Shown here: piece after piece, positions 4,961-64,000 of the stretch
Layout of the letters: every line of letters begins with the position of its first letter
Position numbering within the stretch: position 1 is the stretch's first letter
Source of the DNA: Ostrea edulis
Taxonomy: Eukaryota
Assembly: GCF_947568905.1 (NCBI RefSeq)
Contig: NC_079165.1
Location: forward strand, 103,602,001 to 103,666,000
Direction: 5' to 3'
Length of the DNA stretch: 64,000 bases
Position numbers and translations under genes: made by a program
The notes under the pieces: generated by a model
Database searches by the model: none
Told to the model about the DNA's origin: nothing
What the model saw: only the letters and a program-made list of their open reading frames with translations

Positions 4961-5036
4961 ATAATATTTATAAAAGTCCCATACGACCTGAAAACTCCCG
5001 AGCTTGCCGGAAAGACCCAAAAAGTTCAATCTATAA

Positions 5037-42281: not shown

Positions 42282-42289
42282 TATAAATA
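42282..42289 (+). promoter_or_regulatory. Candidate TATA box of G4
   Basis: AAAC-TATAAATA-G conserved in the homologous upstream region of G5/G6. Confidence 0.5.
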
Positions 42290-42328
42290 GGAATATATTC
42301 ACATTTCTCTTATTGTGTCGAAAGCATT

Positions 42329-44552: not shown

Positions 44553-44666
44553 ATGAAAGAATAAGATAACGAACAGTGATCAATCTCATGATTCCTATAA
44601 GCAATACAAAATTAAGAGTTGGGCAAACACCGATCCATGGACACACTAGAGGAGGGATCAGGTGAC
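44553..44666 (-). mobile_element. Short 3' fragment of the Naiad-like repeat
   Basis: ATGAAAG..AAGATAACGAACAGTGATCAATCTC. Confidence 0.7.
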
Positions 44667-45749
44667 ATGTTTTCTTATAATTTGTTCACCTTTCAGTCGT
44701 TAAACTCATCATCATTACAAACATACATAAAGAATCAGCACATGAAACACGCGAAATACAGTTATGAAGAGAATTATGAAAACACGTAAACTGTCACGAG
44801 TTACAAATGTAATTTATATGATATGATATCGGTATAAATGAGTTTCATTCCGTATGATTTAATGCATAATTAATTGGTTGCGGTTTTACGCCGTTCTGGC
44901 AATGTTTCAGCCATTTTACGGCGTCGATTTAATGCGAAATGACAAAGCTACACATTTTATTTCATAAAAAGGAACAAACACCAATCAATAGAAATCCCTT
45001 GCGCTGCGGAAGGATTCTCTTACCAACTACCGATGTAGCATTGACCGTGAAGGAAGTCATCTTGGTTCTTCGTGTAACCGGAGCATGTAATGCTATTTTT
45101 CAAATTTGAAAGACGTAGTTATTGAAGGTTGAGTTAACAATGAAACTTGATAAGAGGGGGTGTGTTTAGACCTAATGTTTACGTAACTACTGTGTATCAC
45201 CGACACCGGATATTGCTACCAGACGAAGCGAGGACGTTTGAAGTAATAACACACCACGATTAGAAGTCCTTCTTTTCAACAACTTTTTATGCATTTGCTG
45301 ATGCTACCCGTTTGTTTGGATGTTTCAACTATGTTCAGACGTATTGTCAATGACTTAGAATTACACGAAATAGGGCATTTTTCGTTTTATACATTAAATT
45401 TAAGCTCCAGGAACCTGTGAAACTGAGGGCTCATTCTCAGTTTTTAATTCAAATACAATTCTAGTGATTCATTTCACTGTTTCCCCGTTATGATATGGGC
45501 AATATTCTTACATTGAAATCTGTGTTAGTCCATAAATGTTGATTTTATGAAAGAAATTAACAAAACCAATTCAAGACCTTAGTGATTGATAACTATTGGT
45601 GATCTTCAATTAGTTTCATTACATTTAATTCTCCGACAAAGCTAATGCGTGATCATTGCATCATTTCGTATTCAATATTTTACAAATTTTCTTTCAGGAA
45701 ATTGGATGCACTAAGGTCAATTTTTCAAATGATTAATATTAAAAATAAT

Positions 45750-46194
45750 CATTTTCATTCATATGTCAATTACATATATCCATTTGAAATCGCAATAAAA
45801 GACACCACAGAATCCTTCGCCTCTGCTTCGTACTTATCTACCATTGTTAAAGGTATGGCGTGACCTATTTTTCTTTGTTGATGATGTCAATAAATACCAT
45901 TTTGATATAATGTTGGATTGTTTTTTTTTTCTAAATAGTAACAATGTAATTTCATACCGATCTTTAGATCATTCTTGACACACTGATTGTGACTACGAAT
46001 CACTCTGTTTACCTGATTAAGATATTGAATGTGCTCGCGGCGGATGTTACCAGTCGACAGGGGATGCTTCCTCTTCTTAGGCACCTAATCCCACTTCTAG
46101 TATATCCAGGGGTCCCTGTTTGCCGAACTCTCTATTTTGTATTCCTTATAGGAGTTATGAGATTGATCACTGTTCATTATCTTCACCTTTCATG
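45750..46194 (+). mobile_element. Internally deleted Naiad-like copy that retains an RT segment
   Basis: IYPFEIAIKDTTESFASASYL followed by the family 3' tail. Confidence 0.65.
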
Positions 46195-46687
46195 ATACAT
46201 GTTCTAGTTTGATGGTTTATCTCCCTTTCTTGAAAAAATGGAATGACTTGTCTTTCTTTGTTGGTGATGTCAATGAATACCACTTTGATGTAATGATGGA
46301 TTTTTTATTGATCTGTTATTAGTTGCCCACCGACTTTTAAAACCGAAGAGGACTGTATGTTTTTCTCTGTCTACCCGTCCCTTTGTCTGTCAGTCAGTGC
46401 GTTGCATTTGTTTTTCAGACTTTTTCCAGTTATGTTTGTGGAGATTCATTTGAAACATGTAGTGTAGTTTCAGTGTGGCAAATGCCACACTTATTTTTTA
46501 AAGTAAACAATGGCTACTACTTTGGTGTTTGTATTTGTTTACAAATAAATTTTATTTGTTCTAAATCCCTTCAAGACTTTTTCAATCATATTGAGACGTC
46601 ACCACCTGTAGGTGAAGTACCACTTTAGTCCTGTGCTTAGCTCTCAGGGCCGTAGCAGTGAGGGTTTTAACATGCCAAGGGTAAATT

Positions 46688-46797
46688 CAGGTGACCTATT
46701 GCAATCGGTTGTCGTCCGTCGTCGTGCGTCGTCCGTTAACAATGGAACAATTTTAACTTCTTTTTATAACTACCAGACCAACTTGGTATGAACCATT
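46688..46797 (+). mobile_element. Fragment resembling the 5' end of bivalve Helentron/HINE elements; similar fragments at 46318-46460 (+) and 28625-28810 (-)
   Basis: AGGTGACCTATTG..GTCGTCCGTCGTCGT..CGTCCGTTAACAAT pattern with GTC(Y) microsatellites; family call from memory. Confidence 0.45.
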
Positions 46798-49700
46798 CGC
46801 AACGGTCTATGGGGGTGGTGTCGTATCTTTCGTGGTAAGGCTTGCGTTACACGGCTCAACCTGAACCTAGGAGGGCTTCTGTGGCACAGTGGTTTAAAAT
46901 TTAACGCCCTTAACTTCCTGTTTCGCAATACTGAGTTATCTCCCTTTAATCATCAACTTTCGATTACTCAACTATATCACTCACCACTGCCTACAACCAA
47001 TACCTCCTATATTATTTACCCGCACTCTCCAAGTCACACTAAATTTATTAATACACGAAATCTCTTAAATTCTCTTCTCTATTTGTCAAGCTTATCAACA
47101 CCTAGATTGTAAGGAAGTCACAAAATTCCATAAACACTCAGTATCTTCTGATTCGATTCTCACTCTTTACTATCCCGCATTTCCAAAATAGGCAAAACCC
47201 TCAATTCTAGAAAACCTTGTAAATCTCTGTATTCGAAATAAGACCTTTTTTTTTTTTTTTTTTTTTTTACAATTTATTAAAATGGTATAAATCTCTCAAA
47301 TGCACGATCAACAAATTCTAAACTCTGTCTCAGTCTCTCAAGTCACCTAAATCTGTCTATAAACAACTTTTCCCACCACTCTTATGTTGGAAAATCAACC
47401 AACACTCAAAAGTATAAATTATTCCTGACTCCCAATCTTTCTTCCAGACCTCCTGGATGAAATTAAAAAGCAATAACTAAAACTTAGACCCTTGAACTTA
47501 ATTTCTTAGTGAATTTCCAACACTATTGAAATTCCTGAATAATTTCTAAAACTGAGTTCTGGTAAGTCTGAATTCCAGTTATAAAACAACAGCAAAATTT
47601 AGGAATACACTAGCTTCCTCAGCTAAATGTATAATTTACACTAATCTAATAATATATGGATTTCAATAAATTCTGTAACTATAATTATCTGACATCAATT
47701 TACTAAATATTCAACAAATAGCAAATTTCAGCAAAGTCTAATTACTCACTAAAATTCACTTAACTCAACCAAAACTTCTTATGAAATTCCACAAATAATT
47801 CCAAAAACCCAAAGATGTGCTGGAAATATACCTGGCTCTTCTTAAAATAAAATTAAAAAGTCATTCTCAAGTCTAAATACAAAAATGCCCAACCCATGCT
47901 AACTTCTAACTCCTTGCCCCTAAAACGAAGCTTCACTAAGGAAACGAACCTCGCAGAAGAACCAAAATTCCTTGAATCTTTCCCTTTTATAAAACAAAAA
48001 AAAAACAAAAAAAAAAACAGGACGTAAAAGTTGGAAAACGTTGTACACGTTGGAAAATGTCGGAGAATCTCTCGTGACATTTCCCATAAGCGGCAAAACT
48101 CGTAGAAAAATCTAAGTACAAACAAGACAACTATTCTGAATTAAAATCATCACTAAATACATTCCTAAACTGAAATAAGTAAATTATTATCCGTTTAATA
48201 CAAATAACACGGTTAACTCCAAAAATCCCAAAGCTATAGTAACTTTAACGATCGGGCTCGACCTCCTATAATTAAGACAACCAAGTCTGTAAACAAATTC
48301 TACCAGTTTACAACAGGACAATAAACCATCGTTAATCGACTGAAAACAAGTTAGAGGCCGGGAGTAACCTATAAAAATGTACACCCCTACAGCAATTAAG
48401 CATATATGGCAAGAGGGCAGGGCTTAGCAGTGTTATCAGAATAAGCAGCAGTCTGATGCTTGACTCTACACGTGCTCTGTAGCAGACGATATTTTGAACA
48501 GGGAGACTGGCATGATTTATCAAAATAAACTAACGTTTTCCCGCATTTTTTTTACCACTCTGCTCAATCTGTGAGGCACTGAAGGGATATGTTTTTACTT
48601 TAACAAAACTTCACCCTAGGAACTACAAAATGAATTCAGTATTGTTTTATCCATGTCTTTTAAAACATGTAGTTTTATGATAATATACACAAATATTGGT
48701 ATAAATGATATACTAATACTTATGATTTTCCTCTTGGTGCCTTGCAATTATGAGAAGAATTTGGGGGGAAATCGTAGCTGTGCAATTGAGGACATGTGCA
48801 TTGAAGGATTATTAAGAAACACTTTGTCCATTATGATATTTGGAGATCTACTATCTGTGATTGTCTCTTTTGACATTGTAATGTTCACACGTGAGAGTCC
48901 AGATTGAGAGTAATTTTAGAGTGATGGTTGATCAATTGGAAATTTTGTCATCATTGGTGATAGACAATGGGAGTTGCACAACTGGCCTAGGAGATTGTTG
49001 CTTAATCAGACAAACATCATGCTTGACATTATTCGAGAAAAGGTACCAGCAATCCTGCAAAACTCTGAAACAGCAATCAGACTGAACATTCCTAATGAGT
49101 TATTTTTATAAAGTTAACCAATTTTTTAAAGGAATGTGATTATATATCATTAAAAAATAAAATCTGGATTTACCAATGATATGAGTAAGTACTTTTTTCC
49201 ACGTTATACAGTGATTTGATTACATGTTTCCTTTGGTGCAATCTCCCTTATCTAGAACTAGACAAGCATACTCGTGCAATATGTGAGTCAACATCCGGTG
49301 TAAACAATAACAAAAGATAATCACACCCACAAACTGCCAATCTCTAGTTTGAAATACAAATTTCGCCCTGTTTCTGAATGTGACCAGAAAATTCATATAT
49401 TCCACCATTTTCACCAATTGGCTGCTTTTATACCCAATTACCGGCCTTTAAACTACAGGAAACATGCCATCATCCATAAAGCTATGGTTTACTTCCTATA
49501 GGATACCCATTTAAAAGTCCCTAGCAAATTAAGTAAGCTAAAATTCTACAACTTTACCACAGCTTACGATCAGGTGATTTCTACTAAAGTCAAAACATGT
49601 GCTCAAACTATTTCAACACATACAAATCACTTAAACTTTTCAATAATGACCTATCAACTACATGAAAATCATAACTTATACATATTCCTGCAATGTCAAG

Positions 49701-49808
49701 TCAAAATACACCAATACAAGTTCCTCTAAACTTTCCAACAAATGTCATCAATAATCAGGTTCAATAACTCTCTATGAAACTAATCTGTCAAATCACTCGA
49801 CCGTTAAA

Positions 49809-50039
49809 ATATATAAGATCTATTGAGTAGCACCAAATTAGCATAAAATGAAGTAATTGAAAATAGCATTATTTAAAGATATGTTTAATTCTTAATTATT
49901 GCGTGCTTTAAATGAATCAAATAAATCTGTATCATCAGTTAATGAGAGCAATATTGAGTTACTAGTACTGTTCTCTTTTATTGAATTAACGATATCGTTT
50001 GTCTTAATAAGAGCGCGATTATTACAAGATCATCGGTTG

Positions 50040-50092
<53 letters not shown>

Positions 50093-50761
50093 CTCTCTCT
50101 CTCTCTCTCTCTCTCTCAGGGTAAATATTATACTCTGATACTTCCCCTGATTGAAGATAGCCGATCGGCACGGGCTAAGTGTGTCGCAGTCTGTACAATG
50201 GACAATGGTATTACTGTTGGAATGCAAATGGAGTTTATCGTTTTGTTTCATGGATTATGCAAATAAAGGGAGTTTTACTATTGCTGAGAGTATTTTCGAC
50301 AAGTGTACACGTACATCTACGGTCCTTTACATATATTACGAGTAGACCCAGGTAAATCAGTTTTTGTATATTTTGACATATTTACTGCAAATGTACGCAC
50401 ATTCACGTAAAGAAAAGACATTTTATATATATTTATCCAAAGCTTTTAGAATGATTTACTTCTGTACGATATGTTTATTATAATTTTGAGCACTGCGTGG
50501 TGTTCCAAAACGTGATTTTATTTCTTCTTGATGTCCTATAAATTAGTATTGGAGATGTACGTGTTACCTGTCGAAGCTACCCGCACAGGTAAATCGAAGA
50601 TACTGATGTGAAGTGAAGCGTAACAAAACTCGTCCCCTTATATACCATGCGAATCCTGATACATATAACAATAGAATGTTCAACAAATATGGCGGATTAG
50701 CAGAGAAATATGGCGGACATATAGAATTATACTATATTTATTAATTCATGTCAGCTTTAAG
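49809..50761. repeat. Older inverted-repeat unit A, upstream of G5
   Basis: Reverse-complement homology to 54102-55367 with many substitutions and a shared internal GA/CT microsatellite; mirrored at 60576-61538. Confidence 0.9.
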
Positions 50762-50764
50762 TTT

Positions 50765-50853
50765 TTAGGTTTGACACAGTCATGGTACGAGCGAGTCTTG
50801 CACTCAAGACTGGTTACGAAACGAACGCTCTACCAACTGAGCTGCCGCGACCG
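50765..50853 (-). mobile_element. Head only of the same tRNA-SINE; mirrored at 60484-60570 (+)
   Basis: GGTCGCGGCAGCTCAGTTGGTAGAGCGTTCGTTTCGTAACC; body cut off at the boundary of repeat A. Confidence 0.7.
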
Positions 50854-51661
50854 TTATACAAATAAATGATGGTAAGTAAATTCCATATTTTCAACAGTGA
50901 CAAGTGACAAACATGATATACAGTTTACTTACAATATGATTGTGGTATTAAGAAGCATATCAATCATTGTGTGACTGAAAAGGAATTTTTACCACATACT
51001 TTAGGTTACATCACTTAATACGCAAACAAAACAAAGCACGAATCATCTTTAGATAGCAAAATATTGCGAGCTCCGTAATACACATATAAATGAACAAGTG
51101 ACATTATGGTTGATCATAAAATTTGCGAAATGCCAATTTTAAACAAGGCTGTGAAAAATCCCGTACTATAAACTTATTTGTTTTGTAGTCTTGTCTCAGT
51201 TTGAAAATTGATGATACGCAGAACATACTCTCGCTTATGGAATCAGCTGGAAAACACTATATGCAGATGGTATTGAAATATTGCTACATAAATATGGGAA
51301 GTTGAAGACGGAGAAGGTGAAGTCATCCCGTTTGTCAAAGTTGAGTTCTTGATACTTCTGATATATTTTATAATGACAAATTAAATATGCTATAAAAGTG
51401 GACAGTATATATACATTAACATCCAATGGCGAGAGGGGGGGGGGGGGGGGTCAGCACATTCTTGCATTATACTTATTCTTAATGTTCAGTATAAAACTTT
51501 CTCCGGGGAGTAAGTTGATTCCATATGCAAATTGTAGATCTAGATTTTTCTTCTTCTAATTACAATCGAGCCATGACCAAAAAGGATATTTAGATTTGTG
51601 CAGCATATGTGTTTTGCTGGTTACAAATGTAGTCCCATTTCACTGTCTGTCTTAGATCTCC

Positions 51662-52159
51662 ATCGTCAACTTCCCATCTTTGTGCAGCAATATTCCATTA
51701 TCACCTGGATATGGTCTTTATATATCTCAACTGATTCGATATACAAAAGGTTATTCTGCATATAGTCAGTTTTTATATGGAAACAAGCTACTGACAAACA
51801 AGTTGATGGTACAAGGGTTTCAACAGTCTCGATTGAAGTCAGCATTTCTCCAATTCTATGCTCGCTATAACGATCTAGTTCGTCAGTACAATGTTTCAAT
51901 GGGTCAAATGCTGTCTGATGTGTTCATACCGGTTGTTAAGCCGTTCTTGGCACGCTGATTTTGACTACGGATAACTCCATTTACCTGATCAGGATATAGG
52001 GCTCACGGCGGGTGTGACCGGTCGACAGGGGATGCTTACTCCTCCTAGGCACCTGATGTGCCCTGGTGTGTCCAGGGGTCCGTGTTTGCCCAACTATCTA
52101 TTTTGTATTGCTTGTAGGAGTTATGAGACTGATCACTGTCCGTTATCTTCACCTTTCAT
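51662..52159 (+). mobile_element. Naiad-like copy upstream of G5; mirrored at 59171-59668
   Basis: SNIP.SP.YG.YISQLIRY..LLTNKL..QGFQQSRLK plus the 3' tail. Confidence 0.78.
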
Positions 52160-52536
52160 CTACAATGTTTTTGTAACAGTGCATTTTTATTTCGTTTGCT
52201 GTTTTCCGTCCCTTTTGAGAGTTTTAAACTCATATTGAGACGTCAATAGCTTGAGGGAAATTGTCATACATTTTTACTCGTGCATGGCGCTCAAGGTCGA
52301 TGTAATTAGGATTTTCCGTTTTATGGTTATAATCTGAAGACCAATTTAGACGGGAAATGGGAGAGGATGTACAATGATAATTTGTATTGAAAACATTCAC
52401 ATTGATCTGAAATCAAGGAATACAGATTTAGTGGAAATAAATCTAAACAAATATTTGACACGTGCTAGATTCCAGCCACGATACAGAACGACAGTCTTAC
52501 AAGTTAACAATTGAGTTACCCTACTTTGTAGGAAAC

Positions 52537-52544
52537 TATAAATA
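52537..52544 (+). promoter_or_regulatory. Candidate TATA box of G5; mirrored for G6 at 58786-58793 (-)
   Basis: AAAC-TATAAATA-G about 135 bp upstream of the ATG, conserved with G4. Confidence 0.5.
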
Positions 52545-52676
52545 GAAATACATGTTTTGCTATTTCTATTATTATTTCGAAAGGAAATCAGCCATTATCA
52601 CAATGTTTAATTCGTATCAAATAGGAGGAAAAACTACTTGAACCAGGAAGCTCTTTTTCTCAAAGGAACAACAAAA

Positions 52677-53882
52677 ATGGAAAACAGTACGTATTTATCG
52701 GAGAAGTTAGATGCGTGGAATAGTGAACTAGCCAGTGGTTTAACCCCGAATAATGTGATTTTGTCTCTGTATATTGCAACAAGTTTGTTGGGAAATTCTA
52801 CAGTGATTCTGATTTATGGATTTAAGATGAGAGGAAACAAGGAAGAAAGATACTTTATTCCATTCCTTGCTATGGCGGATCTATGTGCTTCCTTGGTTTG
52901 CGCTTCTTTCGGAATCGCTCTCAACATGATGCAGGCCGAGTTTAACAACACGCACCTGTGTAAAGCCTGGTGGTTCTTCGCGGCGTTTACTACTTTCACG
53001 TCAATTTTGTTTCTCTTCATCATTGCCGTACACAGGTATCTCAAAGTCTGTAGACCTCTTGGAAAACAAATGATTCTGAAATGGAAAAGATTTGCTTTAG
53101 GTTTGGGTTTGTTTGTAGCATTTATACATGCTGTACCTATGGTTCATTTTTATGGATCAGTTCCCTTTCCTAATGAGGAGGAGGGGATCGTTGGACTACG
53201 GTGTAGCAGGCTGAAAACCATCAACAAAACAGGCTCTTTGATCTTTGGAGGAGTCATAGTTCTCATAACAGTTGCATGCATTGTTACGCTAATTTTTCTC
53301 TATGCCAAGATTGGATACACTATTCTTGCACACTTCAAATTTTCAAAATCCCCATGCAAACCTGATACCAGTTCGGACACAGAAAAATCCAGCAGGATCA
53401 ATCACTCTCAGGTTACAATCTCAAGCAGAAACGACCCTCTTAGTGGCACAGAAAATGGAACCTACTCTATCGAGACGGACAACACTGAATTATCCGAATC
53501 GTTACCTCCTCAAACGTCTACAAAAACAACAGGGAAAACTCTTACAACAAATACAAAGCTTGAAAGAAAACTGAATCCTTATAAGTCAAGTGCAAAGCGG
53601 AGAAAAGAAAGGAACAACCAGCGAGTTGTACACAAATTCACTCTGATGTTTATGCTCATCACGATAATCTTCCTCATTTGTTACATCCCAAAGGTTATCA
53701 TCATGTTACTAGAGGCTAGGAACCCGAAGTTCTGGGAGGAGTTTTCAGATTCTGCTAGAGCTGGCGTGCTGTTTGTGTATAGGATGTACATCATAAACAA
53801 TATTACTAATCCAATCATTTATGCATTCCTGGACGAGCAGTTTGCTAAAGAAATCAAGTCGTTGTTTAAAGTTTGCAAATGA
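52677..53882 (+). CDS. G5: intronless class A orphan GPCR, 401 aa
   Basis: GNS, LAMAD, HRY, CYIPK, NPIIY. Start set at the ATG homologous to G2/G4; the ORF track uses a TTG at 52638. Confidence 0.95.
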   Translation: MENSTYLSEKLDAWNSELASGLTPNNVILSLYIATSLLGNSTVILIYGFKMRGNKEERYFIPFLAMADLCASLVCASFGIALNMMQAEFNNTHLCKAWWFFAAFTTFTSILFLFIIAVHRYLKVCRPLGKQMILKWKRFALGLGLFVAFIHAVPMVHFYGSVPFPNEEEGIVGLRCSRLKTINKTGSLIFGGVIVLITVACIVTLIFLYAKIGYTILAHFKFSKSPCKPDTSSDTEKSSRINHSQVTISSRNDPLSGTENGTYSIETDNTELSESLPPQTSTKTTGKTLTTNTKLERKLNPYKSSAKRRKERNNQRVVHKFTLMFMLITIIFLICYIPKVIIMLLEARNPKFWEEFSDSARAGVLFVYRMYIINNITNPIIYAFLDEQFAKEIKSLFKVCK

Positions 53883-54101
53883 TAAAATACCATGGTGTCA
53901 TCATTACATAGCTTTGTGAAATATGATATTTCTTAGGTTTTTATGAAATATGGAATCTATTTGACGTCACACAACATTGTGTCCATCTTATCATATGTCA
54001 TCATATTACAAGTAATTACATATATACATAACCATGTAAGTAATTGTAAAGAACATTGGATTTGCAATTCTTTTGGGAAAAGAACATATTATTCATCTCT
54101 G

Positions 54102-55053
54102 CTTAAAGCTGACATGAGTTAATAAATATAGTATAATTCTATATGTCCGCCCTATTTCTTTGCTATTCCGCCATATTAGTTGGATATTCTATTGTTATAT
54201 GTATCAGGGTTCGCATGGTATATAAGGGGACGAGTTTTGCTACGCTTCACTTCACATCAGTGTCTTCGATTTACCTGTGCGGGTAGCTTCGACAGGTAAC
54301 ACGTACATCTCCGATACTAATTTATAGGAGATCAAGAAGAAATGAAATCACGTTTTGAAACACCATGCAGTGCTCAAAATTACAATAAACATATCGTACA
54401 GTAGTAAATCATTCTAAAAGCTTTGGATAAATAAATATAGAGTGCCTTTTCTTTACGTGAATGTGCGTACATTTGCAATAAATATGTCAAAACTATACAA
54501 AAACACGGAGAAATATTTCATCTATTATCTAGATCTATTGATGAAATGGAATAAGCAAAGGATATAAAATCTATACCATTCACACTTACTTCAAGCAAAA
54601 TGCAAATACATAAATGCGACTGTACGTATAAAGAAGACATGGTCATGTATGTTCGTCATGAAAAAGCATCGAATGCGGATGACTATTTACCTGGGTCTAC
54701 TCGTAATATCTGTAAAGGATCGAAGATGTACGTGTATACTTGTCGAGAATACTCAAAGTAGTAGTAAAACGCCCTTTATTAGCATAATCCATGAAGCAAA
54801 ACGATACACTCCATTTGTATACCAACAGTAAACAACATTGTCCATTGTACAAACTGCAACACACTTAGCCCGTGCCGATCAGCCATCTTCAATCAGGGGA
54901 AGTATCAGAGTAGAATATTTACCCTGTATTGTGCATGAATCCCTATACCGTATGATCTACTTGTCAGAGTATTGCAGATTTATAAATCAGGAAATTATTT
55001 AGGTACATAAATTGTTTGTGCATAGATAATTTGCATATACAACACTGCACGAG

Positions 55054-55116
<63 letters not shown>

Positions 55117-55367
55117 CAGGATATATATATATATATATATATATTCAAACGATGATCTTGTAATAATCGCGCTCTTATTAAGACAAATGATATCGTTAAT
55201 TCAATATAAGAGAACAGTAACTCAATATTGCTCTCATTAATTGATAATACAGATTTATTTGATTCATTTAAATCACGCAATAATTAAAAATTAAACATAT
55301 TTTTAAATAATATTATTTTTAATTACTTCATTTTATGCTAATTCGGCGCTCAATAGATCTTATATAT
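54102..55367. repeat. Older inverted-repeat unit A', downstream of G5
   Basis: Reverse complement of 49809-50761, with extra insertions near 54505-54680 and 54927-55060. Confidence 0.9.
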
Positions 55368-55635
55368 CTATGCCATTTTGTTTTATTACATTCTGCGTTT
55401 AACTCGACGCAAATTCTAGTAATGCAAAATGTAATAATTGAGTTTATCATATGCGTAGTTATCAAGCACATAGAATATTTTTTTTAAAACATATTTTATT
55501 GAGAAACTCAACAGGATTGAGCAACAGGCATAGCCTATGTAGGCCCTCTCCCAAATACAAAGGTCAAGTACAAAGTACTTAGAATCAAAGTGAGGGGACA
55601 AGAGTGTCTGTCCTCCACCTTTGATAACAATATCC

Positions 55636-55831
55636 ATTTTTTTATGTTTTCCGCCACACTCAACAATTTTTCAGTTATCTGGTGGCACCGAGTTTTTGTT
55701 GGTGGAAGAAAGAAAACAGATACAATGTATCTGGGAAGAGACCACCGACCTTCCGAAAGTATACTGGGAAACTTTCTCACTTACCGGCGCGAGCGGGTTT
55801 CGAACCCGTGCCGACAGAAGTGAGAGGCCGT
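55636..55831 (-). mobile_element. Copy of the second SINE family in the palindrome spacer; B box kept, A box missing
   Basis: GGGTTCGAAACCC followed by the same body as 4739-4960. Confidence 0.65.
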
Positions 55832-55969
55832 TATTTTGTAATGCAAGTAAAAATATATTGGGCAATAATGCTGAATTAGTAGTGTGAAAGAGTGTGAGAA
55901 TGTATAAAATTATTATTATGTATCTTCATTACTATTACTGATGATTATGTGAATATGGAAAAAGAATAA

Positions 55970-56027
<58 letters not shown>

Positions 56028-56029
<2 letters not shown>

Positions 56030-56865
56030 TGATGATCAGATGGAGTTCAATCACATAACATTTATTTCTCTACAGTCTGTTTCGTAAGGGGATGGTTTCC
56101 CCTCACTCGTCGGGAGAAAAATGACATCTAACGAAAAACATCCGCATGGCTGAGAATATGTTACACAGAAACATACTGGATAGTTGCTAAGCATGATTAC
56201 ACACAGGATTGAGTAAATAGAAATTTATGGGAATGACGGCAAGTGCTGACGAGTTCTGAACGCTTATTCAATGAAGATTTTTCGGGATGACATATTATAA
56301 AGAATTTCTCTAGAATACAAAGGTTGCACTTTTTTGAAATGTTTGAGTATGATGATGTTTTTCCTAAAATTTCCCACTTGATTTTGTAGTCAATATTTTT
56401 GTCTTTCAATGTCTATATGAATTTGCTGAGCTCGGTGGTATTCTTTTTCGTGGAATTACGGAATGAATGAGTGTGGTTGGCGTATCTTAATTTGAACTCG
56501 GTGTCTGCTAGTCCCACGTAGCTCTCTTCTTGTCCATTATCGGCTCTGACTCTAGCTAAGTACACAATTCCGTGGGCGCGACATTCACCGTTGAGCGGGC
56601 ATTGATCTTTGTTTCGGCAATTACACCTGTTACATGTATCTCCGGTCTGGCGCACTTGTTTGATTGAAGCGTTATGCGAGTCGATTACATTTTGCATGGA
56701 TGGCATACAACTGTACGATATTTTAATAGTGTTTCTGTTGATAATCGAGCAATAATAATAACATGGCCTATCGGGAAACACTCATCTATAATTTTGAGAA
56801 ACTGTTTACCCAAGTTTGTTTTTACGTTACTATCATATGGGGGGTTAAACCATGTGATGTTACGG
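56028..56865 (-). mobile_element. 5'-truncated Penelope-like element with a C-terminal GIY-YIG endonuclease remnant
   Basis: [45 protein letters not shown] linker, [27 protein letters not shown]; one frameshift and a TAG at 56413-56415; a hammerhead follows the ORF. Confidence 0.88.
56059..56123 (-). ncRNA. Type I hammerhead ribozyme motif with a core substitution (CCGACGA)
   Basis: Minus strand TTTCTC-CCGACGA-GTGAGGGG(AAACCAT)CCCCTTAC-GAA-ACAGACTGT-A-GAGAAA; stems I, II and III all pair; GUA cleavage site. Confidence 0.8.
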
Positions 56866-59800
56866 ACATTCACGTAAAGAAAAGGCACTCTATATTTATT
56901 TATCCAAAGCTTTTAGAATGATTTACTACTGTACGATATGTTTATTGTAATTTTGAGCACTGCATGGTGTTTCAAAACGTGATTTCATTTCTTCTTGATC
57001 TCCTATAAATTAGTATCGGAGATGTACGTGTTACCTGTCGAAGCTACCCGCACAGGTAAATCGAAGACACTGATGTGAAGTGAAGCGTAGCAAAACTCGT
57101 CCCCTTATATACCATGCGAACCCTGATACATATAACAATAGAATATCCAACTAATATGGCGGAATAGCAAAGAAATAGGGCGGACATATAGAATTATACT
57201 ATATTTATTAACTCATGTCAGCTTTAAGCAGAGATGAATAATATGTTCTTTTCCCAAAAGAATTGCAAATCCAATGTTCTTTACAATTACTTACATGGTT
57301 ATGTATATATGTAATTACTTGTAATATGATGACATATGATAAGATGGACACAATGTTGTGTGACGTCAAATAGATTCCATATTTCATAAAAACCTAAGAA
57401 ATATCATATTTCACAAAGCTATGTAATGATGACACCATGGTATTTTATCATTTGCAAACTTTAAACAACGACTTGATTTCTTTAGCAAACTGCTCGTCCA
57501 GGAATGCATAAATGATTGGATTAGTAATATTGTTTATGATGTACATCCTATACACAAACAGCACGCCAGCTCTAGCAGAATCTGAAAACTCCTCCCAGAA
57601 CTTCGGGTTCCTAGCCTCTAGTAACATGATGATAACCTTTGGGATGTAACAAATGAGGAAGATTATCGTGATGAGCATAAACATCAGAGTGAATTTGTGT
57701 ACAACTCGCTGGTTGTTCCTTTCTTTTCTCCGCTTTGCACTTGACTTATAAGGATTCAGTTTTCTTTCAAGCTTTGTATTTGTTGTAAGAGTTTTCCCTG
57801 TTGTTTTTGTAGACGTTTGAGGAGGTAACGATTCGGATAATTCAGTGTTGTCCGTCTCGATAGAGTAGGTTCCATTTTCTGTGCCACTAAGAGGGTCGTT
57901 TCTGCTTGAGATTGTAACCTGAGAGTGATTGATCCTGCTGGATTTTTCTGTGTCCGAACTGGTATCAGGTTTGCATGGGGATTTTGAAAATTTGAAGTGT
58001 GCAAGAATAGTGTATCCAATCTTGGCATAGAGAAAAATTAGCGTAACAATGCATGCAACTGTTATGAGAACTATGACTCCTCCAAAGATCAAAGAGCCTG
58101 TTTTGTTGATGGTTTTCAGCCTGCTACACCGTAGTCCAACGATCCCCTCCTCCTCATTAGGAAAGGGAACTGATCCATAAAAATGAACCATAGGTACAGC
58201 ATGTATAAATGCTACAAACAAACCCAAACCTAAAGCAAATCTTTTCCATTTCAGAATCATTTGTTTTCCAAGAGGTCTACAGACTTTGAGATACCTGTGT
58301 ACGGCAATGATGAAGAGAAACAAAATTGACGTGAAAGTAGTAAACGCCGCGAAGAACCACCAGGCTTTACACAGGTGCGTGTTGTTAAACTCGGCCTGCA
58401 TCATGTTGAGAGCGATTCCGAAAGAAGCGCAAACCAAGGAAGCACATAGATCCGCCATAGCAAGGAATGGAATAAAGTATCTTTCTTCCTTGTTTCCTCT
58501 CATCTTAAATCCATAAATCAGAATCACTGTAGAATTTCCCAACAAACTTGTTGCAATATACAGAGACAAAATCACATTATTCGGGGTTAAACCACTGGCT
58601 AGTTCACTATTCCACGCATCTAACTTCTCCGATAAATACGTACTGTTTTCCATTTTTGTTGTTCCTTTGAGAAAAAGAGCTTCCTGGTTCAAGTAGTTTT
58701 TCCTCCTATTTGATACGAATTAAACATTGTGATAATGGCTGATTTCCTTTCGAAATAATAATAGAAATAGCAAAACATGTATTTCTATTTATAGTTTCCT
58801 ACAAAGTAGGGTAACTCAATTGTTAACTTGTAAGACTGTCGTTCTGTATCGTGGCTGGAATCTAGCACGTGTCAAATATTTGTTTAGATTTATTTCCACT
58901 AAATCTGTATTCCTTGATTTCAGATCAATGTGAATGTTTTCAATACAAATTATCATTGTACATCCTCTCCCATTTCCCGTCTAAATTGGTCTTCAGATTA
59001 TAACCATAAAACGGAAAATCCTAATTACATCGACCTTGAGCGCCATGCACGAGTAAAAATGTATGACAATTTCCCTCAAGCTATTGACGTCTCAATATGA
59101 GTTTAAAACTCTCAAAAGGGACGGAAAACAGCAAACGAAATAAAAATGCACTGTTACAAAAACATTGTAGATGAAAGGTGAAGATAACGGACAGTGATCA
59201 ATCTCATAACTCCTACAAGCAATACAAAATAGATAGTTGGGCAAACACGGACCCCTGGACACACCAGGGCACATCAGGTGCCTAGGAGGAGTAAGCATCC
59301 CCTGTCGACCGGTCACACCCGCCGTGAGCCCTATATCCTGATCAGGTAAATGGAGTTATCCGTAGTCAAAATCAGTGTGCCAAGAACGGCTTAACAATCG
59401 GTATGAACACATCAGACAGCATTTGACCCATTGAAACATTGTACTGACGAACTAGATCGTTATAGCGAGCATAGAATTGGAGAAATGCTGACTTCAATCG
59501 AGACTGTTGAAACCCTTGTACCATCAACTTGTTTGTCAGTAGCTTGCTTCCATATAAAAACTGACTATATGCAGAATAACCTTTTGTATATCGAATCAGT
59601 TGAGATATATAAAGACCATATCCAGGTGATAATGGAATATTGCTGCACAAAGATGGGAAGTTGACGATGGAGATCTAAGACAGACAGTGAAATGGGACTA
59701 CATTTGTAACCAGCAAAACACATATGCTGCACAAATCTAAATATCCTTTTTGGTCATGGCTCGATTGTAATTAGAAGAAGAAAAATCTAGATCTACAATT

Positions 59801-61218
59801 TGCATATGGAATCAACTTACTCCCCGGAGAAAGTTTTATACTGAACATTAAGAATAAGTATAATGCAAGAAAGTGCTGACCCCCCCCCCCCCCTCCCCCC
59901 CCTCTCGCCATTGGATGTTAATGTATATATACTGCCCACTTTTATAGCATATTTAATTTGTCATTATAAAATATATCAGAAGTATCAAGAACTCAACTTT
60001 GACAAACGGGATGACTTCACCTTCTCCGTCTTCAACTTCCCATATTTATGTAGCAATATTTCAATACCATCTGCATATAGTGTTTTCCAGCTGATTCCAT
60101 AAGCGAGAGTATGTTCTGCGTATCATCAATTTTCAAACTGAGACAAGACTACAAAACAAATAAGTTTATAGTACGGGATTTTTCACAGCCTTGTTTAAAA
60201 TTGGCATTTCGCAAATTTTATGATCAACCATAATGTCACTTGTTCATTTATATGTGTATTACGGAGCTCGCAATATTTTGCTATCTAAAGATGATTCGTG
60301 CTTTGTTTTGTTTGCGTATTAAGTGATGTAACCTAAAGTATGTGGTAAAAATTCCTTTTCAGTCACACAATGATTGATATGCTTCTTAATACCACAATCA
60401 TATTGTAAGTAAACTGTATATCACGTTTGTCACTTGTCACTGTTGAAAATATGGAATTTACTTACCATCATTTATTTGTATAACGGTCGCGGCAGCTCAG
60501 TTGGTAGAGCGTTCGTTTCGTAACCAGTCTTGAGTGCAAGACTCGCTCGTACCATGACTGTGTCAAACTTAAAAACTTAAAGCTGACATGAATTAATAAA
60601 TATAGTATAATTCTATATGTCCGCCATATTTCTCTGCTAATCCGCCATATTTGTTGAACATTCTATTGTTATATGTATCAGGATTCGCATGGTATATAAG
60701 GGGACGAGTTTTGTTACGCTTCACTTCACATCAGTATCTTCGATTTACCTATGCGGGTAGCTTCGACAGGTAACACGTACATCTCCAATACTAATTTATA
60801 GGACATCAAGAAGAAATAAAATCACGTTTTGGAACACCACGCAGTGCTCAAAATTATAATAAACATATCGTACAGTAGTAAATCATTCTAAAAGCTTTGG
60901 ATAAATATATACAAAATGTCTTTTCTTTACGTGAATGTGCGTACATTTGCAGTAAATATGTCAAAATATACAAAAACTGATTTACCTGGGTCTACTCGTA
61001 ATATCTGTAAAGGACCGTAGATGTACGTGTACACTTGTCGAAAATACTCTCAGCAATAGTAAAACTCCCTTTATTTGCATAATCCATGAAACAAAACGAT
61101 AAACTCCATTTGCATTCCAACAGTAATACCATTGTCCATTGTACAGACTGCGACACACTTAGCCCGTGCCGATCGGCTATCTTCAATCAGGGGAAGTATC
61201 AGAGTATAATATTTACCC

Positions 61219-61307
<89 letters not shown>

Positions 61308-64000
61308 CAACCGATGATCTTGTAATAATCGCGCTCTTATTAAGACAAACGATATCGTTAATTCAATAAAAGAGAACAGTACTAGTAACTCAATATTGCT
61401 CTCATTAACTGATGATACAGATTTATTTGATTCATTTAAAGCACGCAATAATTAAGAATTAAACATATCTTTAAATAATGCTATTTTCAATTACTTCATT
61501 TTATGCTAATTTGGTGCTACTCAATAGATCTTATATATTTTAACGGTCGAGTGATTTGACAGATTAGTTTCATAGAGAGTTATTGAACCTGATTATTGAT
61601 GACATTTGTTGGAAAGTTTGGAGGAACTTGTATTGGTGTATTTTGACTTGACATTGCAGGAATATGTATAAGTTATGATTTTCATGTAGTTGATAGGTCA
61701 TTATTGAAAAGTTTAAGTGATTTGTATGTGTTGAAATAGTTTGAGCACATGTTTTGACTTTAGTAGAAATCACCTGATCGTAAGCTGTGGTAAAGTTGTA
61801 GAATTTTAGCTTACTTAATTTGCCAGGGACTTTTAAATGGGTATCCTATAGGAAGTAAACCATAGCTTTATGGATGATGGCATGTTTCCTGTAGTTTAAA
61901 GGCCGGTAATTGGGTATAAAAGCAGCCAATTGGTGAAAATGGTGGAATATATGAATTTTCTGGTCACATTCAGAAACAGGGCGAAATTTGTATTTCAAAC
62001 TAGAGATTGGCAGTTTGTGGGTGTGATTATCTTTTGTTATTGTTTACACCGGATGTTGACTCACATATTGCACGAGTATGCTTGTCTAGTTCTAGATAAG
62101 GGAGATTGCACCAAAGGAAACATGTAATCAAATCACTGTATAACGTGGAAAAAAGTACTTACTCATATCATTGGTAAATCCAGATTTTATTTTTTAATGA
62201 TATATAATCACATTCCTTTAAAAAATTGGTTAACTTTATAAAAATAACTCATTAGGAATGTTCAGTCTGATTGCTGTTTCAGAGTTTTGCAGGATTGCTG
62301 GTACCTTTTCTCGAATAATGTCAAGCATGATGTTTGTCTGATTAAGCAACAATCTCCTAGGCCAGTTGTGCAACTCCCATTGTCTATCACCAATGATGAC
62401 AAAATTTCCAATTGATCAACCATCACTCTAAAATTACTCTCAATCTGGACTCTCACGTGTGAACATTACAATGTCAAAAGAGACAATCACAGATAGTAGA
62501 TCTCCAAATATCATAATGGACAAAGTGTTTCTTAATAATCCTTCAATGCACATGTCCTCAATTGCACAGCTACGATTTTCCCCCAAATTCTTCTCATAAT
62601 TGCAAGGCACCAAGAGGAAAATCATAAGTATTAGTATATCATTTATACCAATATTTGTGTATATTATCATAAAACTACATGTTTTAAAAGACATGGATAA
62701 ATCAATAATGAATTCATTTTGTAGTTCCTAGGGTGAAGTTTTGTTAAAGTAAAAACATATCCTTTCAGTGCCTCACAGATTGAGCAGAGTGGTAAAAAAA
62801 AATGCGGGAAAACGTTAGTTTATTTTGATAAATCATGCCAGTCTCCCTGTTCAAAATATCGTCTGCTACAGAGCACGTGTAGAGTCAAGCATCAGACTGC
62901 TGCTTATTCTGATAACACTGCTAAGCCCTGCCCTCTTGCTATATATGCTTAATTGCTGTAGGGGTGTACATTTTTATAGGTTACTCCCGGCCTCTAACTT
63001 GTTTTCAGTCGATTAACGATGGTTTATTGTCCTGTTGTAAACTGGTAGAATTTGTTTACAGACTTGGTTGTCTTAATTATAGGAGGTCGCGCCCGATCGT
63101 TAAAGTTACTATAGCTTTGGAATTTTTGGAGTTAATCGTGTTATTTGTATTAAACGGAAAATAATTTACTTATTTCAGTTTAGGAATGTATTTAGTGATG
63201 ATTTTAATTCAGAATAGTTGTCTTGTTTGTACTTAGATTTTTCTACGAGTTTTGCCGCTTATGGGAAATGTCACGAGAGATTCTCCGACATTTTCCAACG
63301 TGTACAACGTTTTCCAACTTTTACGTCCTATTTTGTTTTGTTTTTTTATATAAAAGGGAAAGATTCAAGGAATTTTGGTTCTTCTGCGAGGTTCGTTTCC
63401 TTAGTGAAGCTTCGTTTTAGGGGCAAGGAGTTAGAAGTTAGCATGGGTTGGGCATTTTTGTATTTAGACTTGAGAATGACTTTTTAATTTTATTTTAAGA
63501 AGAGCCAGGTATATTTCCAGCACATCTTTGGGTTTTTGGAATTATTTGTGGAATTTCATAAGAAGTTTTGGTTGAGTTAAGTGACTTTTAGTGAATAATT
63601 AGACTTTGTTGAAATTTGCTATTTGTTGAATATTTAGTAAATTGATGTCAGATAATTATAGTTACAGAATTTATTGAAATCCATATATTATTAGATTAGT
63701 GTAAATTATACATTTAGCTGAGGAAGCTAGTGTATTCCTAAATTTTGCTGTTGTTTTATAACTGGAATTCAGACTTACCAGAACTCAGTTTTAGAAATTA
63801 TTCAGGAATTTCAATAGTGTTGGAAATTCACTAAGAAATTAAGTTCAAGGGTCTAAGTTTTAGTTATTGCTTTTTAATTTCATCCAGGAGGTCTGGAAGA
63901 AAGATTGGGAGTCAGGAATAATTTATACTTTTGAGTGTTGGTTGATTTTCCAACATAAGAGTGGTGGGAAAAGTTGTTTATAGACAGATTTAGGTGACTT
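56866..64000. repeat. Right arm of the giant inverted duplication
   Basis: Reverse complement of 47340-54464. Confidence 0.97.
57448..58653 (-). CDS. G6: inverted copy of G5
   Basis: Reverse complement of 52677-53882; no nucleotide difference found in a line-by-line comparison. Confidence 0.95.
   Translation of the reverse strand: MENSTYLSEKLDAWNSELASGLTPNNVILSLYIATSLLGNSTVILIYGFKMRGNKEERYFIPFLAMADLCASLVCASFGIALNMMQAEFNNTHLCKAWWFFAAFTTFTSILFLFIIAVHRYLKVCRPLGKQMILKWKRFALGLGLFVAFIHAVPMVHFYGSVPFPNEEEGIVGLRCSRLKTINKTGSLIFGGVIVLITVACIVTLIFLYAKIGYTILAHFKFSKSPCKPDTSSDTEKSSRINHSQVTISSRNDPLSGTENGTYSIETDNTELSESLPPQTSTKTTGKTLTTNTKLERKLNPYKSSAKRRKERNNQRVVHKFTLMFMLITIIFLICYIPKVIIMLLEARNPKFWEEFSDSARAGVLFVYRMYIINNITNPIIYAFLDEQFAKEIKSLFKVCK

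What the first reader, a model, noticed from the sequence alone, without database searches (positions are those of the whole stretch)
47340..64000. Giant palindrome duplicating a GPCR tail-to-tail
Seen: arms of at least 7.1 kb (47340-54464 and 56866-64000) surround a 2.4-kb unique spacer, each carrying one copy of the same receptor pointing at the spacer. The outer arms differ by substitutions and microsatellite lengths, so this is not a simple read fold-back. Established: large palindromes, as on mammalian sex chromosomes, preserve gene pairs by arm-to-arm conversion and are prone to spacer inversion. Inference: palindrome formation is one route of expansion for this receptor family. Caveat: two alleles mis-joined in a heterozygous assembly could mimic it.
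Basis: partly seen in the sequence, partly recalled or inferred. Interest (0 to 1): 0.8.

Follow-up and report, generated by a model that had tools for sequence, protein, structure and literature searches.

The report
Oyster receptor gene inverted duplication
A 7.6-kb stretch of a flat-oyster chromosome carrying one intact receptor gene is present twice as a mirror-image pair around a 2.4-kb spacer of transposon debris; it is most likely a young, ordinary inverted gene duplication, and public short-read data could not independently confirm it.

Summary
The window is Ostrea edulis chromosome OX387705.1 (assembly GCA_947568905.1). Sequence fetched past the window end shows the arms are finite: 46862-54469 and 56861-64483, 7.6 kb, 99.1% identical.

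Each arm carries an identical, intact, intronless rhodopsin-type GPCR gene of 401 aa, and the two genes lie tail-to-tail. The inner 2335 bp of each arm is 100% identical. The outer 5.3 kb has 33 substitutions and 7 indels (P of an identical tract by chance about 4e-7).

The spacer is unique within the palindrome but is made of high-copy transposon fragments. The left arm/spacer boundary is ancestral continuity. The novel joint is on the right (56865/56866), where a 5'-truncated GIY-YIG (Penelope-like) repeat meets the inverted arm through a 4-nt microhomology. That looks like DNA-break or retroelement repair, not an assembler overlap.

The assembly is gap-free HiFi here, so a mis-join inside a 2.4-kb spacer is unlikely (about 0.15). 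The reads test gave only short contigs over repeats and was inconclusive.

Verdict: a probably real, young inverted segmental duplication, possibly polymorphic, in a tandem cluster of at least 8 paralogs. It is a new member of a known kind and of modest interest. Other readers of this scan had already noted parts of it.

The parts
46862..54469 (+). Left arm of the palindrome (probably the ancestral copy)
   Evidence: Blast of L002 against L001, 99.1% over 7636 columns; base-by-base alignment
56861..64000 (-). Right arm (derived copy); it runs on to 64483, which is 483 bp past the window end
   Evidence: The end at 64480-64483 is seen in L001
54470..56860 (.). Spacer of 2391 bp made of repeat fragments: the rest of the older repeat S', (GA)27, an unclassified repeat, (TA)28, and a truncated GIY-YIG/Penelope-like fragment
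   Evidence: high-copy k-mer depth
52130..54464 (+). Inner tract of the left arm that is 100% identical to 56866-59200. It holds the whole receptor gene plus about 550 bp upstream of the ATG and about 580 bp downstream.
   Evidence: last difference at 52129; P of zero differences = 4.4e-7 at the outer-arm rate
56866..59200 (-). Mirror of the identical tract in the right arm
52677..53882 (+). G5: intronless rhodopsin-family GPCR gene, 401 aa from the ATG (the ORF opens at 52638)
   Evidence: ORF; Pfam 7tm_1 at E 8.5e-31; called gene in the public annotation
57448..58653 (-). G6: identical copy of G5, tail-to-tail with it
   Evidence: G5 equals G6 at the nucleotide level
56861..56866 (.). Novel inner joint: the truncated transposon (through 56865) meets the inverted arm (from 56866). 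TACG at 56861-56864 is shared by both sides. 56865 G follows the transposon, not the arm.
   Evidence: Sequence; loose ends at 56865 in runs X2 and X7 show other copies of the repeat running on with different letters
56030..56865 (-). 5'-truncated repeat with broken ORFs for a Cys-rich motif plus a GIY-YIG-type endonuclease at the C-terminal end; probably the 3' part of a Penelope-like element. Its 3' end abuts (TA)28.
   Evidence: ORFs; homologues, one named GIY-YIG domain-containing; sequence; Penelope-like element traits in PMC8557442. Pfam and Rfam gave no support.
55972..56026 (.). (TA)28 microsatellite next to the 3' end of the Penelope-like fragment. It is the likely insertion target and a possible original centre of the palindrome.
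49809..50761 (+). Older repeat copy S, which also belongs to a high-copy family
   Evidence: 85-94% inverted match to 54102-55367
54102..55367 (-). Older repeat copy S', inverted relative to S. It is collinear across the left arm/spacer boundary at 54469, which shows that this boundary is ancestral continuity.
51738..52160 (.). Very high-copy short repeat (MITE/SINE-like). The identical tract starts at its edge. Its mirror copy lies at 59170-59592.
   Evidence: Seven further copies in the window; k-mer depth 1e6

Best explanation
This is a real, evolutionarily young inverted segmental duplication in the sequenced flat-oyster haplotype.

Shown:
- A 7.6-kb segment from inside a tandem cluster of orphan rhodopsin-type receptor genes lies again in reverse orientation 2.4 kb to its right. 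The segment holds one intact intronless gene and several transposon copies. The result is two identical receptor genes lying tail-to-tail.
- The right-hand copy is the derived one. Its inner end is a repair-type joint between the truncated 5' end of a GIY-YIG (Penelope-like) repeat and the inverted arm. The joint shows 4 nt of microhomology and one mismatched base.

Inferred (two variants for how it formed):
- The duplication arose by repair of a broken or retroelement-primed 3' end. In variant (a) that end folded back on its own strand 2.4 kb upstream and copied it.
- In variant (b) the palindrome was first centred on the self-complementary (TA)n. It then lost about 1.5 kb of the right arm's tip when the Penelope-like element inserted there.

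Inferred (the identical tract):
- The perfectly identical inner 2.3 kb beside a 0.6% diverged outer arm reflects one of two events. One is a recent arm-to-arm gene-conversion tract. The other is a very recent duplication whose outer part was later exchanged with a different allele.

The functional effect is a doubled dose of one receptor gene whose paralogs evolve under purifying selection.
For: - Arms and identity.
- Finite arms, and no N in the window or in 4.65 kb beyond it.
- Identical intact genes that are annotated as genes.
- The left boundary lies inside a collinear older repeat, so it is ancestral continuity.
- At the right joint, other copies of the repeat continue differently beyond 56865 (loose ends in X2 and X7). 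The joint shares TACG with the arm.
- The repeat encodes a GIY-YIG-type ORF and ends at (TA)28. This matches the 5' truncation and the inverted arrangements described for Penelope-like elements, and the (TA)n target preference reported for the Naiad clade (PMC8557442).
- The assembly comes from 38x HiFi reads with hifiasm (PMC10979132). Reads of that kind are expected, from general knowledge, to be far longer than the 2.4-kb spacer. The contig path should therefore rest on molecules that contain spacer and both arms.
- Polymorphic recent duplications are reported to be very common in this species (bioRxiv 10.1101/2025.06.24.661118).
- Non-random identical tract: P = 4e-7.
- Paralog dN/dS of 0.1-0.5.
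Against: - No independent data set was shown to contain the novel joint or both arms.
  - The four public runs gave only 120-580-bp contigs, and none of those listed bridges 56865/56866.
  - Everything around both boundaries is high-copy repeat, and no single-copy depth baseline was available.
  - None of the four runs carries the reference haplotype across the identical tract, so they may simply lack the duplication.
- Outer-arm divergence (0.6% substitutions plus microsatellite length changes) is in the range I would expect, from general knowledge, for two oyster alleles. The mis-join caveat is therefore not excluded by divergence alone.
- At 51402 the runs show either the left-arm or the right-arm letter, as alleles would. 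At 51458 all three covering runs show only the right-arm letter.
- No other O. edulis assembly was reachable.
- The two formation variants, and the two explanations of the identical tract, cannot be told apart with the data at hand.
Confidence: 0.78

Rival explanations
1. Assembly artefact. The two arms are the two alleles of a single-copy locus in a highly heterozygous individual, wrongly laid head-to-head in one contig. The genome would then hold one receptor gene here, not two.
For: - Outer-arm divergence (0.63% substitutions plus microsatellite length differences) is allele-like.
- At 51402 one individual run shows the left-arm letter and two show the right-arm letter.
- Curation of this assembly removed 33 haplotypic duplications, so such errors did occur (PMC10979132).
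- No independent run was shown to bridge the joint.
Against: - Haplotypic duplications normally sit at contig ends or gaps. Here there is no N within 47 kb to the left or 4.6 kb to the right.
- The orientation is inverted and the spacer is only 2.4 kb. By my general knowledge of HiFi read lengths, any read entering the spacer should run into both arms. A mis-join would then need real palindromic molecules.
- The joint is a 4-nt microhomology at a truncated transposon, not a long overlap of the kind assemblers join on.
- The two 'alleles' would have to be identical over 2335 bp and share at least four letters (52526, 53717, 53937, and 53074/53076 in three of the four runs) that the four other individuals do not show. 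Right next to this tract they differ at 0.6%.
- Each 'allele' would also need its own different outer flank.
Confidence: 0.13
2. Old, fixed palindrome maintained by recurrent arm-to-arm gene conversion, as on mammalian sex chromosomes. The duplication would be ancient, and concerted evolution would keep the gene pair identical.
For: - An identical inner tract covers the whole gene while the outer arms have diverged.
- The tract adjoins the spacer.
Against: - Maximum arm divergence is only 0.6%, against dS of 0.098 to the nearest paralog G2, so nothing indicates great age.
- A single sharp step in identity needs only one event.
- Nothing in the four runs shows both arm variants together in one individual. 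Logan contigs drop variants, so this is weak evidence.
- Most duplications detected in this species are reported to be low-frequency polymorphisms.
Confidence: 0.15
3. Retroelement-made duplication. The Penelope-like element's own target-primed reverse transcription produced the inverted copy. Its cDNA 3' end would have jumped by microhomology onto nearby genomic DNA, and synthesis would have continued for 7.6 kb.
For: - The element's truncated 5' end is exactly at the joint, with a 4-nt microhomology and a mismatched terminal base.
- Its 3' end sits on (TA)28.
- Penelope-like elements are known for inverted 5'-truncated arrangements (PMC8557442).
Against: - The outer joint at 64484 shows no (TA)n half-site.
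- Copying 7.6 kb of DNA is far beyond the known template jumps of reverse transcriptases, from my own knowledge.
- The same anatomy arises if an ordinary insertion with a target-site deletion hit a pre-existing palindrome.
Confidence: 0.12

Closest known systems
Gene-bearing palindromes of mammalian X and Y chromosomes (for example human Y P1-P8)
   Same: Inverted arms more than 99% identical around a non-duplicated spacer; intact gene pairs in the arms; a tract of perfect identity compatible with arm-to-arm conversion.
   Different: From my own knowledge, arms here are 7.6 kb against 9 kb to 1.45 Mb. Here the organism is a sequentially hermaphroditic oyster (PMC12144841 abstract, listed; I know of no sex chromosomes in it) and the cargo is an orphan GPCR rather than testis genes. 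There is no evidence of fixation or of recurrent conversion. The spacer is transposon debris.
Inverted duplications with a short single-copy spacer made by fold-back priming or microhomology-mediated template switching (yeast, and human inv-dup rearrangements)
   Same: An inverted copy separated from its template by a kb-scale spacer; a joint with a few nt of microhomology; the template side is left intact.
   Different: This case is interstitial, not terminal. No deletion partner is visible. A retroelement end sits at the joint. The comparison rests on my own knowledge, not on a tool result.
Polymorphic segmental duplications of Ostrea edulis (Colston-Nepali, Lapegue and Bierne, bioRxiv 10.1101/2025.06.24.661118)
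   Same: Same species; recent duplications with near-identical copies that hit coding and non-coding DNA alike and mostly segregate at low frequency.
   Different: That study infers copy number from depth and does not locate or orient the copies. Here the reference itself carries the two-copy state with its exact joints. The frequency of this one is unknown.
Lineage-specific tandem expansions of orphan class-A GPCRs in bivalves ('probable G-protein coupled receptor No18', 'cholecystokinin receptor-like')
   Same: Pfam 7tm_1; intronless; at least 8 intact paralogs within about 145 kb on one chromosome; relatives in Saccostrea, Magallana/Crassostrea, Mytilus, Pinctada and Pecten.
   Different: The other paralogs are older (dS 0.1-2), and most are in direct orientation. 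Only this pair is a mirror-image duplicate with intact flanks.

Membership tests
Genomic palindrome (large inverted repeat with spacer) | Two kb-scale arms in inverted orientation with very high identity | tested here: met
   7.6 kb arms at 99.1% identity
Genomic palindrome (large inverted repeat with spacer) | A central spacer that is not part of the repeat | tested here: met
   A 2391-bp spacer with no mirror partner; it consists of high-copy repeats
Genomic palindrome (large inverted repeat with spacer) | Arm-to-arm gene conversion keeps the arms alike | tested here: inconclusive
   The identical 2335-bp tract is non-random (P 4e-7). A young duplication followed by allelic exchange gives the same pattern.
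Genomic palindrome (large inverted repeat with spacer) | Both arms present on single DNA molecules, and seen in independent individuals | tested here: inconclusive
   Only short Logan contigs were available, and no listed piece bridges the joint. No other assembly was found, and a junction 32-mer was absent from the metagenome contigs.
Rhodopsin-family (class A) GPCR | Seven-transmembrane 7tm_1 domain over the whole protein | tested here: met
   PF00001, E 8.5e-31, profile positions 1-260 of 260; matches to solved orexin, CCK and opioid receptors at E of 1e-14 or weaker
Rhodopsin-family (class A) GPCR | Conserved E/DRY and NPxxY motifs | tested here: met
   Read from the translation: HRY (in AVHRYL) in place of DRY, and NPIIY at the expected TM7 position. 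The DRY acid residue is replaced.
Rhodopsin-family (class A) GPCR | Membership of a named ligand class (CCK, orexin and the like) | not tested
   The database names conflict (No18, CCK-like, olfactory-like). No orthology analysis was done, so I treat the protein as an orphan.
Penelope-like retroelement (the spacer fragment) | GIY-YIG endonuclease with an upstream Cys motif | tested here: inconclusive
   The motifs GIVY...YVG...R..H and CxxCxC are read from the ORF, and one relative is named GIY-YIG domain-containing. Pfam gave no GIY-YIG hit.
Penelope-like retroelement (the spacer fragment) | Reverse transcriptase of the Penelope-like/telomerase type | not testable with these tools
   The copy is truncated upstream of the endonuclease region, so no RT is present in the window.
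Penelope-like retroelement (the spacer fragment) | 5' truncation and insertion at a (TA)n microsatellite | tested here: met
   Other copies run on past 56865; the 3' end abuts (TA)28; the traits are described in PMC8557442, with the (TA)n preference reported there for the Naiad clade.
Penelope-like retroelement (the spacer fragment) | Hammerhead ribozyme motif in the pseudo-LTR | tested here: not met
   No Rfam match at E up to 0.1 in 44000-64000. A truncated copy may simply lack that part.
Haplotypic (false) duplication in an assembly | Lies at a contig end or next to a gap, usually in direct orientation | tested here: not met
   No N in the window or in L001, and the orientation is inverted.
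Haplotypic (false) duplication in an assembly | Each copy has half the normal read depth | tested here: inconclusive
   Contig depths only, with no single-copy baseline inside the laid stretch.

The most novel reading that the evidence does not exclude
A Penelope-like retroelement insertion at a (TA)n site directly created, or immediately reshaped, a gene-bearing palindrome. In that reading retroelement integration intermediates are a source of inverted duplications of host genes in bivalve genomes. That could help explain the very high load of young polymorphic duplications reported for oysters.
Probability: 0.12. Interest if true: 0.6.

Novelty: new member of a known kind. Interest (0 to 1): 0.3.

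Why it matters
If real, this is a cleanly resolved example, with both joints at base-pair level, of how a bivalve receptor family gains a copy. Copy-number variation is reported to be rampant in this species but is usually seen only as excess read depth.

The joint anatomy (a truncated retroelement, a 4-nt microhomology and a neighbouring (TA)n) gives a testable lead on mechanism.

The sharp switch from 0.6% divergence to perfect identity offers a small natural test of gene conversion against allelic exchange.

For users of the reference genome, reads from G5 and G6 will multi-map, and SNP calls in the arms will be unreliable.

It does not change what is known about palindromes or about GPCRs.

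Tried and rejected
1. Reads test. I laid Logan contigs of four O. edulis runs from four studies on 51300-57100. I hoped to see contigs bridging both boundaries and a 2:1 depth step between arm and spacer.
   - It failed because the spacer, the arm tip and a MITE are high-copy repeats.
   - Contigs are only 120-580 bp, contig depth has no single-copy baseline, and the tool lists only the longest pieces.
2. Other O. edulis assemblies. The 90% clusters of G5, G4 and G2 each hold a single member, and the word search found only paralogs and other species. No independent assembly could be compared.
3. Exact look-ups of two small ORFs that straddle the novel joint, hoping for contigs from other runs: nothing on record.
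4. Exact 32-mer across the joint in the metagenome contigs: no match. A blank was expected and it says little.
5. The continuation of spacer-repeat copies seen as loose ends at 56865 was searched for in the window plus L001. The aim was to see whether other animals join the spacer directly to the outer flank. No match was found, so it is just the repeat's own sequence.
6. Extension of the palindrome past the right-hand transposon. A mirror copy of G4 was sought. G4's protein has one place only and a one-member cluster, so the arms cannot reach as far as G4.
7. Pfam and PDB searches for GIY-YIG in the spacer ORF and Rfam for hammerheads or a SINE tRNA head: all negative.
8. Fold-back of a single molecule as the artefact: rejected because the arms differ at 40 places.

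Full report
**Identity of the window.** An exact look-up of the receptor protein places the window on Ostrea edulis (European flat oyster) chromosome record OX387705.1 of assembly GCA_947568905.1, at about 103.60-103.67 Mb of 109.5 Mb. Window position x corresponds to record position x + 103,602,000. The same look-up returned 10-kb flanks. Locus L001 is the reverse complement of window positions 47448-68653 (verified base for base). It therefore shows 4.65 kb beyond the window end. There are no N in the window or in L001.

**The observation.** The repeat finder and blastn confirm a large inverted repeat.
- With the extra sequence the arms are finite: 46862-54469 and 56861-64483, 99.1% identical over 7636 aligned columns.
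- A base-by-base alignment shows 33 substitutions and 7 indels. Among them are a (TC)5 length difference, a G-run and A/T-rich runs. All lie between 46865 and 52129.
- From 52130 to 54464 (2335 bp; mirror 56866-59200) the arms are identical. At the outer-arm substitution rate (0.63%) about 14.6 differences would be expected there. The chance of none is 4.4e-7.

**The cargo.** Each arm has an open reading frame (52638/52677-53882 on +, 57448-58653/58692 on -) for the same 401-aa protein from the first ATG.
- The two coding sequences are identical, and both are called genes in the public record.
- The protein matches Pfam 7tm_1 over the whole profile (E 8.5e-31). It also matches solved orexin, cholecystokinin and opioid receptors weakly (E 1e-14 and weaker).
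- HRY and NPIIY stand at the DRY and NPxxY positions (read).
- The genes point at the spacer with 587 bp between each stop codon and the arm tip, so 'tail-to-tail' is correct.

**The gene family around it.** The window holds four more intact paralogs: 2817-3995 +, 7647-8855 +, 12346-13548 - and 42329-43612 +.
- Further paralogs lie 45 kb and 80 kb past the window end, both on +. A 632-aa 7tm_1 gene lies at L004:1633-5729, also on +.
- Relatives are found in other oysters, mussels, pearl oysters and scallops under conflicting automatic names.
- Pairwise dN/dS among paralogs is 0.11-0.50, so the family is under purifying selection.
- The nearest paralog of G5 is G2 (dS 0.098).

**Anatomy of the boundaries.** A self-comparison shows an older, diverged (85-94%) inverted repeat pair: S at 49809-50761 and S' at 54102-55367.
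- S' is collinear with S across position 54469. The left arm/spacer boundary is therefore not a breakpoint: arm and spacer are contiguous ancestral sequence there.
- The right arm's tip (56861-57228) is a copy of the first 368 bp of S'.
- The novel joints are therefore on the right. At the inner one the + strand reads ...CATGTGATGT TACGG ACATTCACG....
- Contigs from two other oysters match the spacer side up to 56865 and then continue with different letters, GAACGATTTC... (loose ends). Those letters are not found anywhere in the 68.6 kb at hand.
- The spacer side is thus one copy of a multi-copy element, broken off exactly here.
- TACG (56861-56864) is shared by the element and the arm. 56865 G follows the element, where the arm's mirror would give C. 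This amounts to a 4-nt microhomology with one mismatched terminal base.

**The element at the inner joint.** On the minus strand the element carries broken ORFs with a Cys-rich motif followed by GIVY...YVG...R..H, and then ends.
- Its relatives are widespread unnamed short proteins, one of them named GIY-YIG domain-containing.
- About 170 bp after the last ORF the element abuts (TA)28 at 55972-56026.
- Strong 5' truncation and adjacent inverted 5'-truncated copies are published traits of Penelope-like elements. A preference for (TA)n targets is reported for the Naiad clade (PMC8557442).
- Pfam, the PDB sequence search and Rfam gave no support for the endonuclease or for a hammerhead, and no reverse transcriptase is left. 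The assignment is therefore probable, not proven.

**The outer right boundary.** Homology ends at 64480-64483. There a roughly 320-bp unit, repeated once, begins with CTCTCAAGCAATGG. It is followed 3 kb on by a retrotransposon pol gene.
- This looks like the terminus of another transposon.
- The arm may therefore be interrupted rather than ended there. It cannot extend as far as G4, which has no mirror copy.

**Is it real?** The assembly was made from 38x PacBio HiFi reads with hifiasm, purge_dups and Hi-C scaffolding. Curators removed 33 haplotypic duplications (PMC10979132).
- False duplications of that kind sit at contig ends or gaps. This one is inverted and lies inside gap-free sequence.
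- By my general knowledge of HiFi read lengths, the spacer is much shorter than a read. The assembled path should therefore need real molecules holding spacer and both arms.
- The joint is a microhomology at a truncated transposon, not a long overlap.
- A fold-back of one molecule is excluded by the 40 arm differences.

**The direct test was inconclusive.** I could use only Logan contigs of four runs from four studies.
- The spacer, the arm tip from 54016 and the repeat at 51700-52270 have k-mer depths of 1e4 to 1e6.
- Contigs are 120-580 bp, and none listed bridges 56865/56866.
- No single-copy baseline lay within the 5.8 kb laid.
- All four runs differ from the reference inside the identical tract. 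T>C at 52526 is seen in three runs. The changes at 53074, 53076, 53717 and 53937 are seen in all four; only X2 also holds the reference letters, and only at 53074/53076. None of the four therefore carries the reference haplotype, and none appears to be the source animal.
- At the two arm-difference sites outside high-copy repeats the picture is mixed. At 51402 runs X1 and X2 show the right-arm letter and X5 the left-arm letter. At 51458 all three show the right-arm letter. Contigs drop variants, so this neither shows nor excludes two arms in those animals.
- No other O. edulis assembly was reachable through the protein collection. Look-ups of joint-spanning ORFs and of a joint 32-mer found nothing.
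- I put the artefact at about 0.13-0.15.

**How it most likely arose.** The derived right arm needs a free 3' end at 56865 that continued by copying the left arm's + strand from 54464 outward. There are two readings.
- (a) A break or an integration intermediate left the element's truncated end as a 3' tail. The tail folded back 2.4 kb upstream on its own strand at CGTA (54466-54469) and primed synthesis. This is the fold-back route known, from my own knowledge, for inverted duplications with kb-scale spacers.
- (b) The palindrome first formed by snap-back at the self-complementary (TA)n. The Penelope-like element then inserted at (TA)n, and its 5' joining deleted the first 1.5 kb or so of the right arm through the same microhomology.
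- Both readings give the present sequence, and I cannot separate them.

**The identical inner tract.** This needs one further event. It may be an arm-to-arm conversion tract running from the spacer to about 52130, at the edge of the high-copy repeat. Or the whole duplication may be very young, with a later crossover or conversion against a one-copy allele having replaced the outer part of one arm. The report that young, low-frequency polymorphic duplications are extremely common in O. edulis (bioRxiv 10.1101/2025.06.24.661118) makes the young, possibly polymorphic reading attractive.

**Comparison and verdict.**
- The structure works like the gene-bearing palindromes of mammalian sex chromosomes in form: inverted arms above 99% identity, a spacer and a gene pair.
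- It is three orders of magnitude smaller than the largest of them, and it is not shown to be fixed or maintained by recurrent conversion.
- It is best filed as an inverted segmental duplication inside a tandem GPCR cluster.
The other paralogs are older, most lie in direct orientation, and homology between them is confined almost to the ORF.
- This is a new member of a known kind, and the interest is modest.
- Other first-stage notes of this scan had already described the identical inner tract, the older inverted repeat and the microhomology joint on this same stretch. I checked all three here. A note on another chromosome piece describes a comparable metallothionein inverted duplication that was also left unproven.

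Noticed in passing
window:14606-26882: A 12.3-kb satellite of about 396 copies of a 31-bp unit (95% matches) with a very strong strand skew (GC skew +0.35, AT skew -0.34). It sits between receptor genes G3 and G4.
   Followed up: no
window:7601-8859 vs 52631-53886; 42123-43610 vs 52349-53880: Homology between receptor paralogs stops almost exactly at the ORF ends. G2/G5 are 93.4% identical from 46 bp upstream of the ATG to 4 bp past the stop, although dS is only 0.098. Flanks of that age should still align. This hints at ORF-limited gene conversion between paralogs, or at duplication of the bare ORF.
   Followed up: partly
window:51738-52160, 59170-59592, 5034-5309, 10093-10518, 10829-11262, 31224-31519, 32167-32568, 45951-46193: A short repeat of about 425 bp (MITE/SINE-like) has at least nine copies in the window. 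Its k-mer depth is about 1e6 in Logan contigs of four oysters, which makes it one of the most abundant repeats of the genome.
   Followed up: partly
window:46865-46910: The outermost bases of the arms carry a tRNA-like A-box (TGGCACAGTGG) about 10 bp inside the homology boundary. This suggests that a SINE head lies at the arm's outer edge. Rfam found no tRNA-like family there.
   Followed up: partly
L001:3830-4170 (window 64484-64824 equivalent, beyond the window end): The sequence flanking the right arm starts exactly with a unit of about 320 bp that is repeated once in tandem (75% identity). A retrotransposon pol gene (RVT_1, RNase H, integrase) follows 3 kb on. This is probably a transposon terminus that ends or interrupts the arm.
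   Followed up: partly
window:7647-8855 and 12346-13548: G2 (+) and the much more diverged G3 (-) also lie tail-to-tail, about 3.5 kb apart. It could be the worn remnant of an older inverted duplication, or a coincidence.
   Followed up: no
L004:1633-5729: About 75 kb to the right of the window end, an annotated 632-aa gene combines DUF5641 (a retroelement-associated domain) with a 7tm_1 receptor domain. It may be a chimeric or mis-merged gene model in the same receptor cluster.
   Followed up: no
window:39928-40710: A 260-aa ORF on the minus strand resembles, by eye only, the C-terminal part of a non-LTR retrotransposon reverse transcriptase. It lies just upstream of G4.
   Followed up: no
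window:50077-50095: Four arm differences form a symmetric pattern (G>C, G>C, C>G, C>G within 19 bp) next to the (GA)n/(TC)n tract. It looks like a tiny inversion or a microsatellite register shift rather than four independent substitutions.
   Followed up: no
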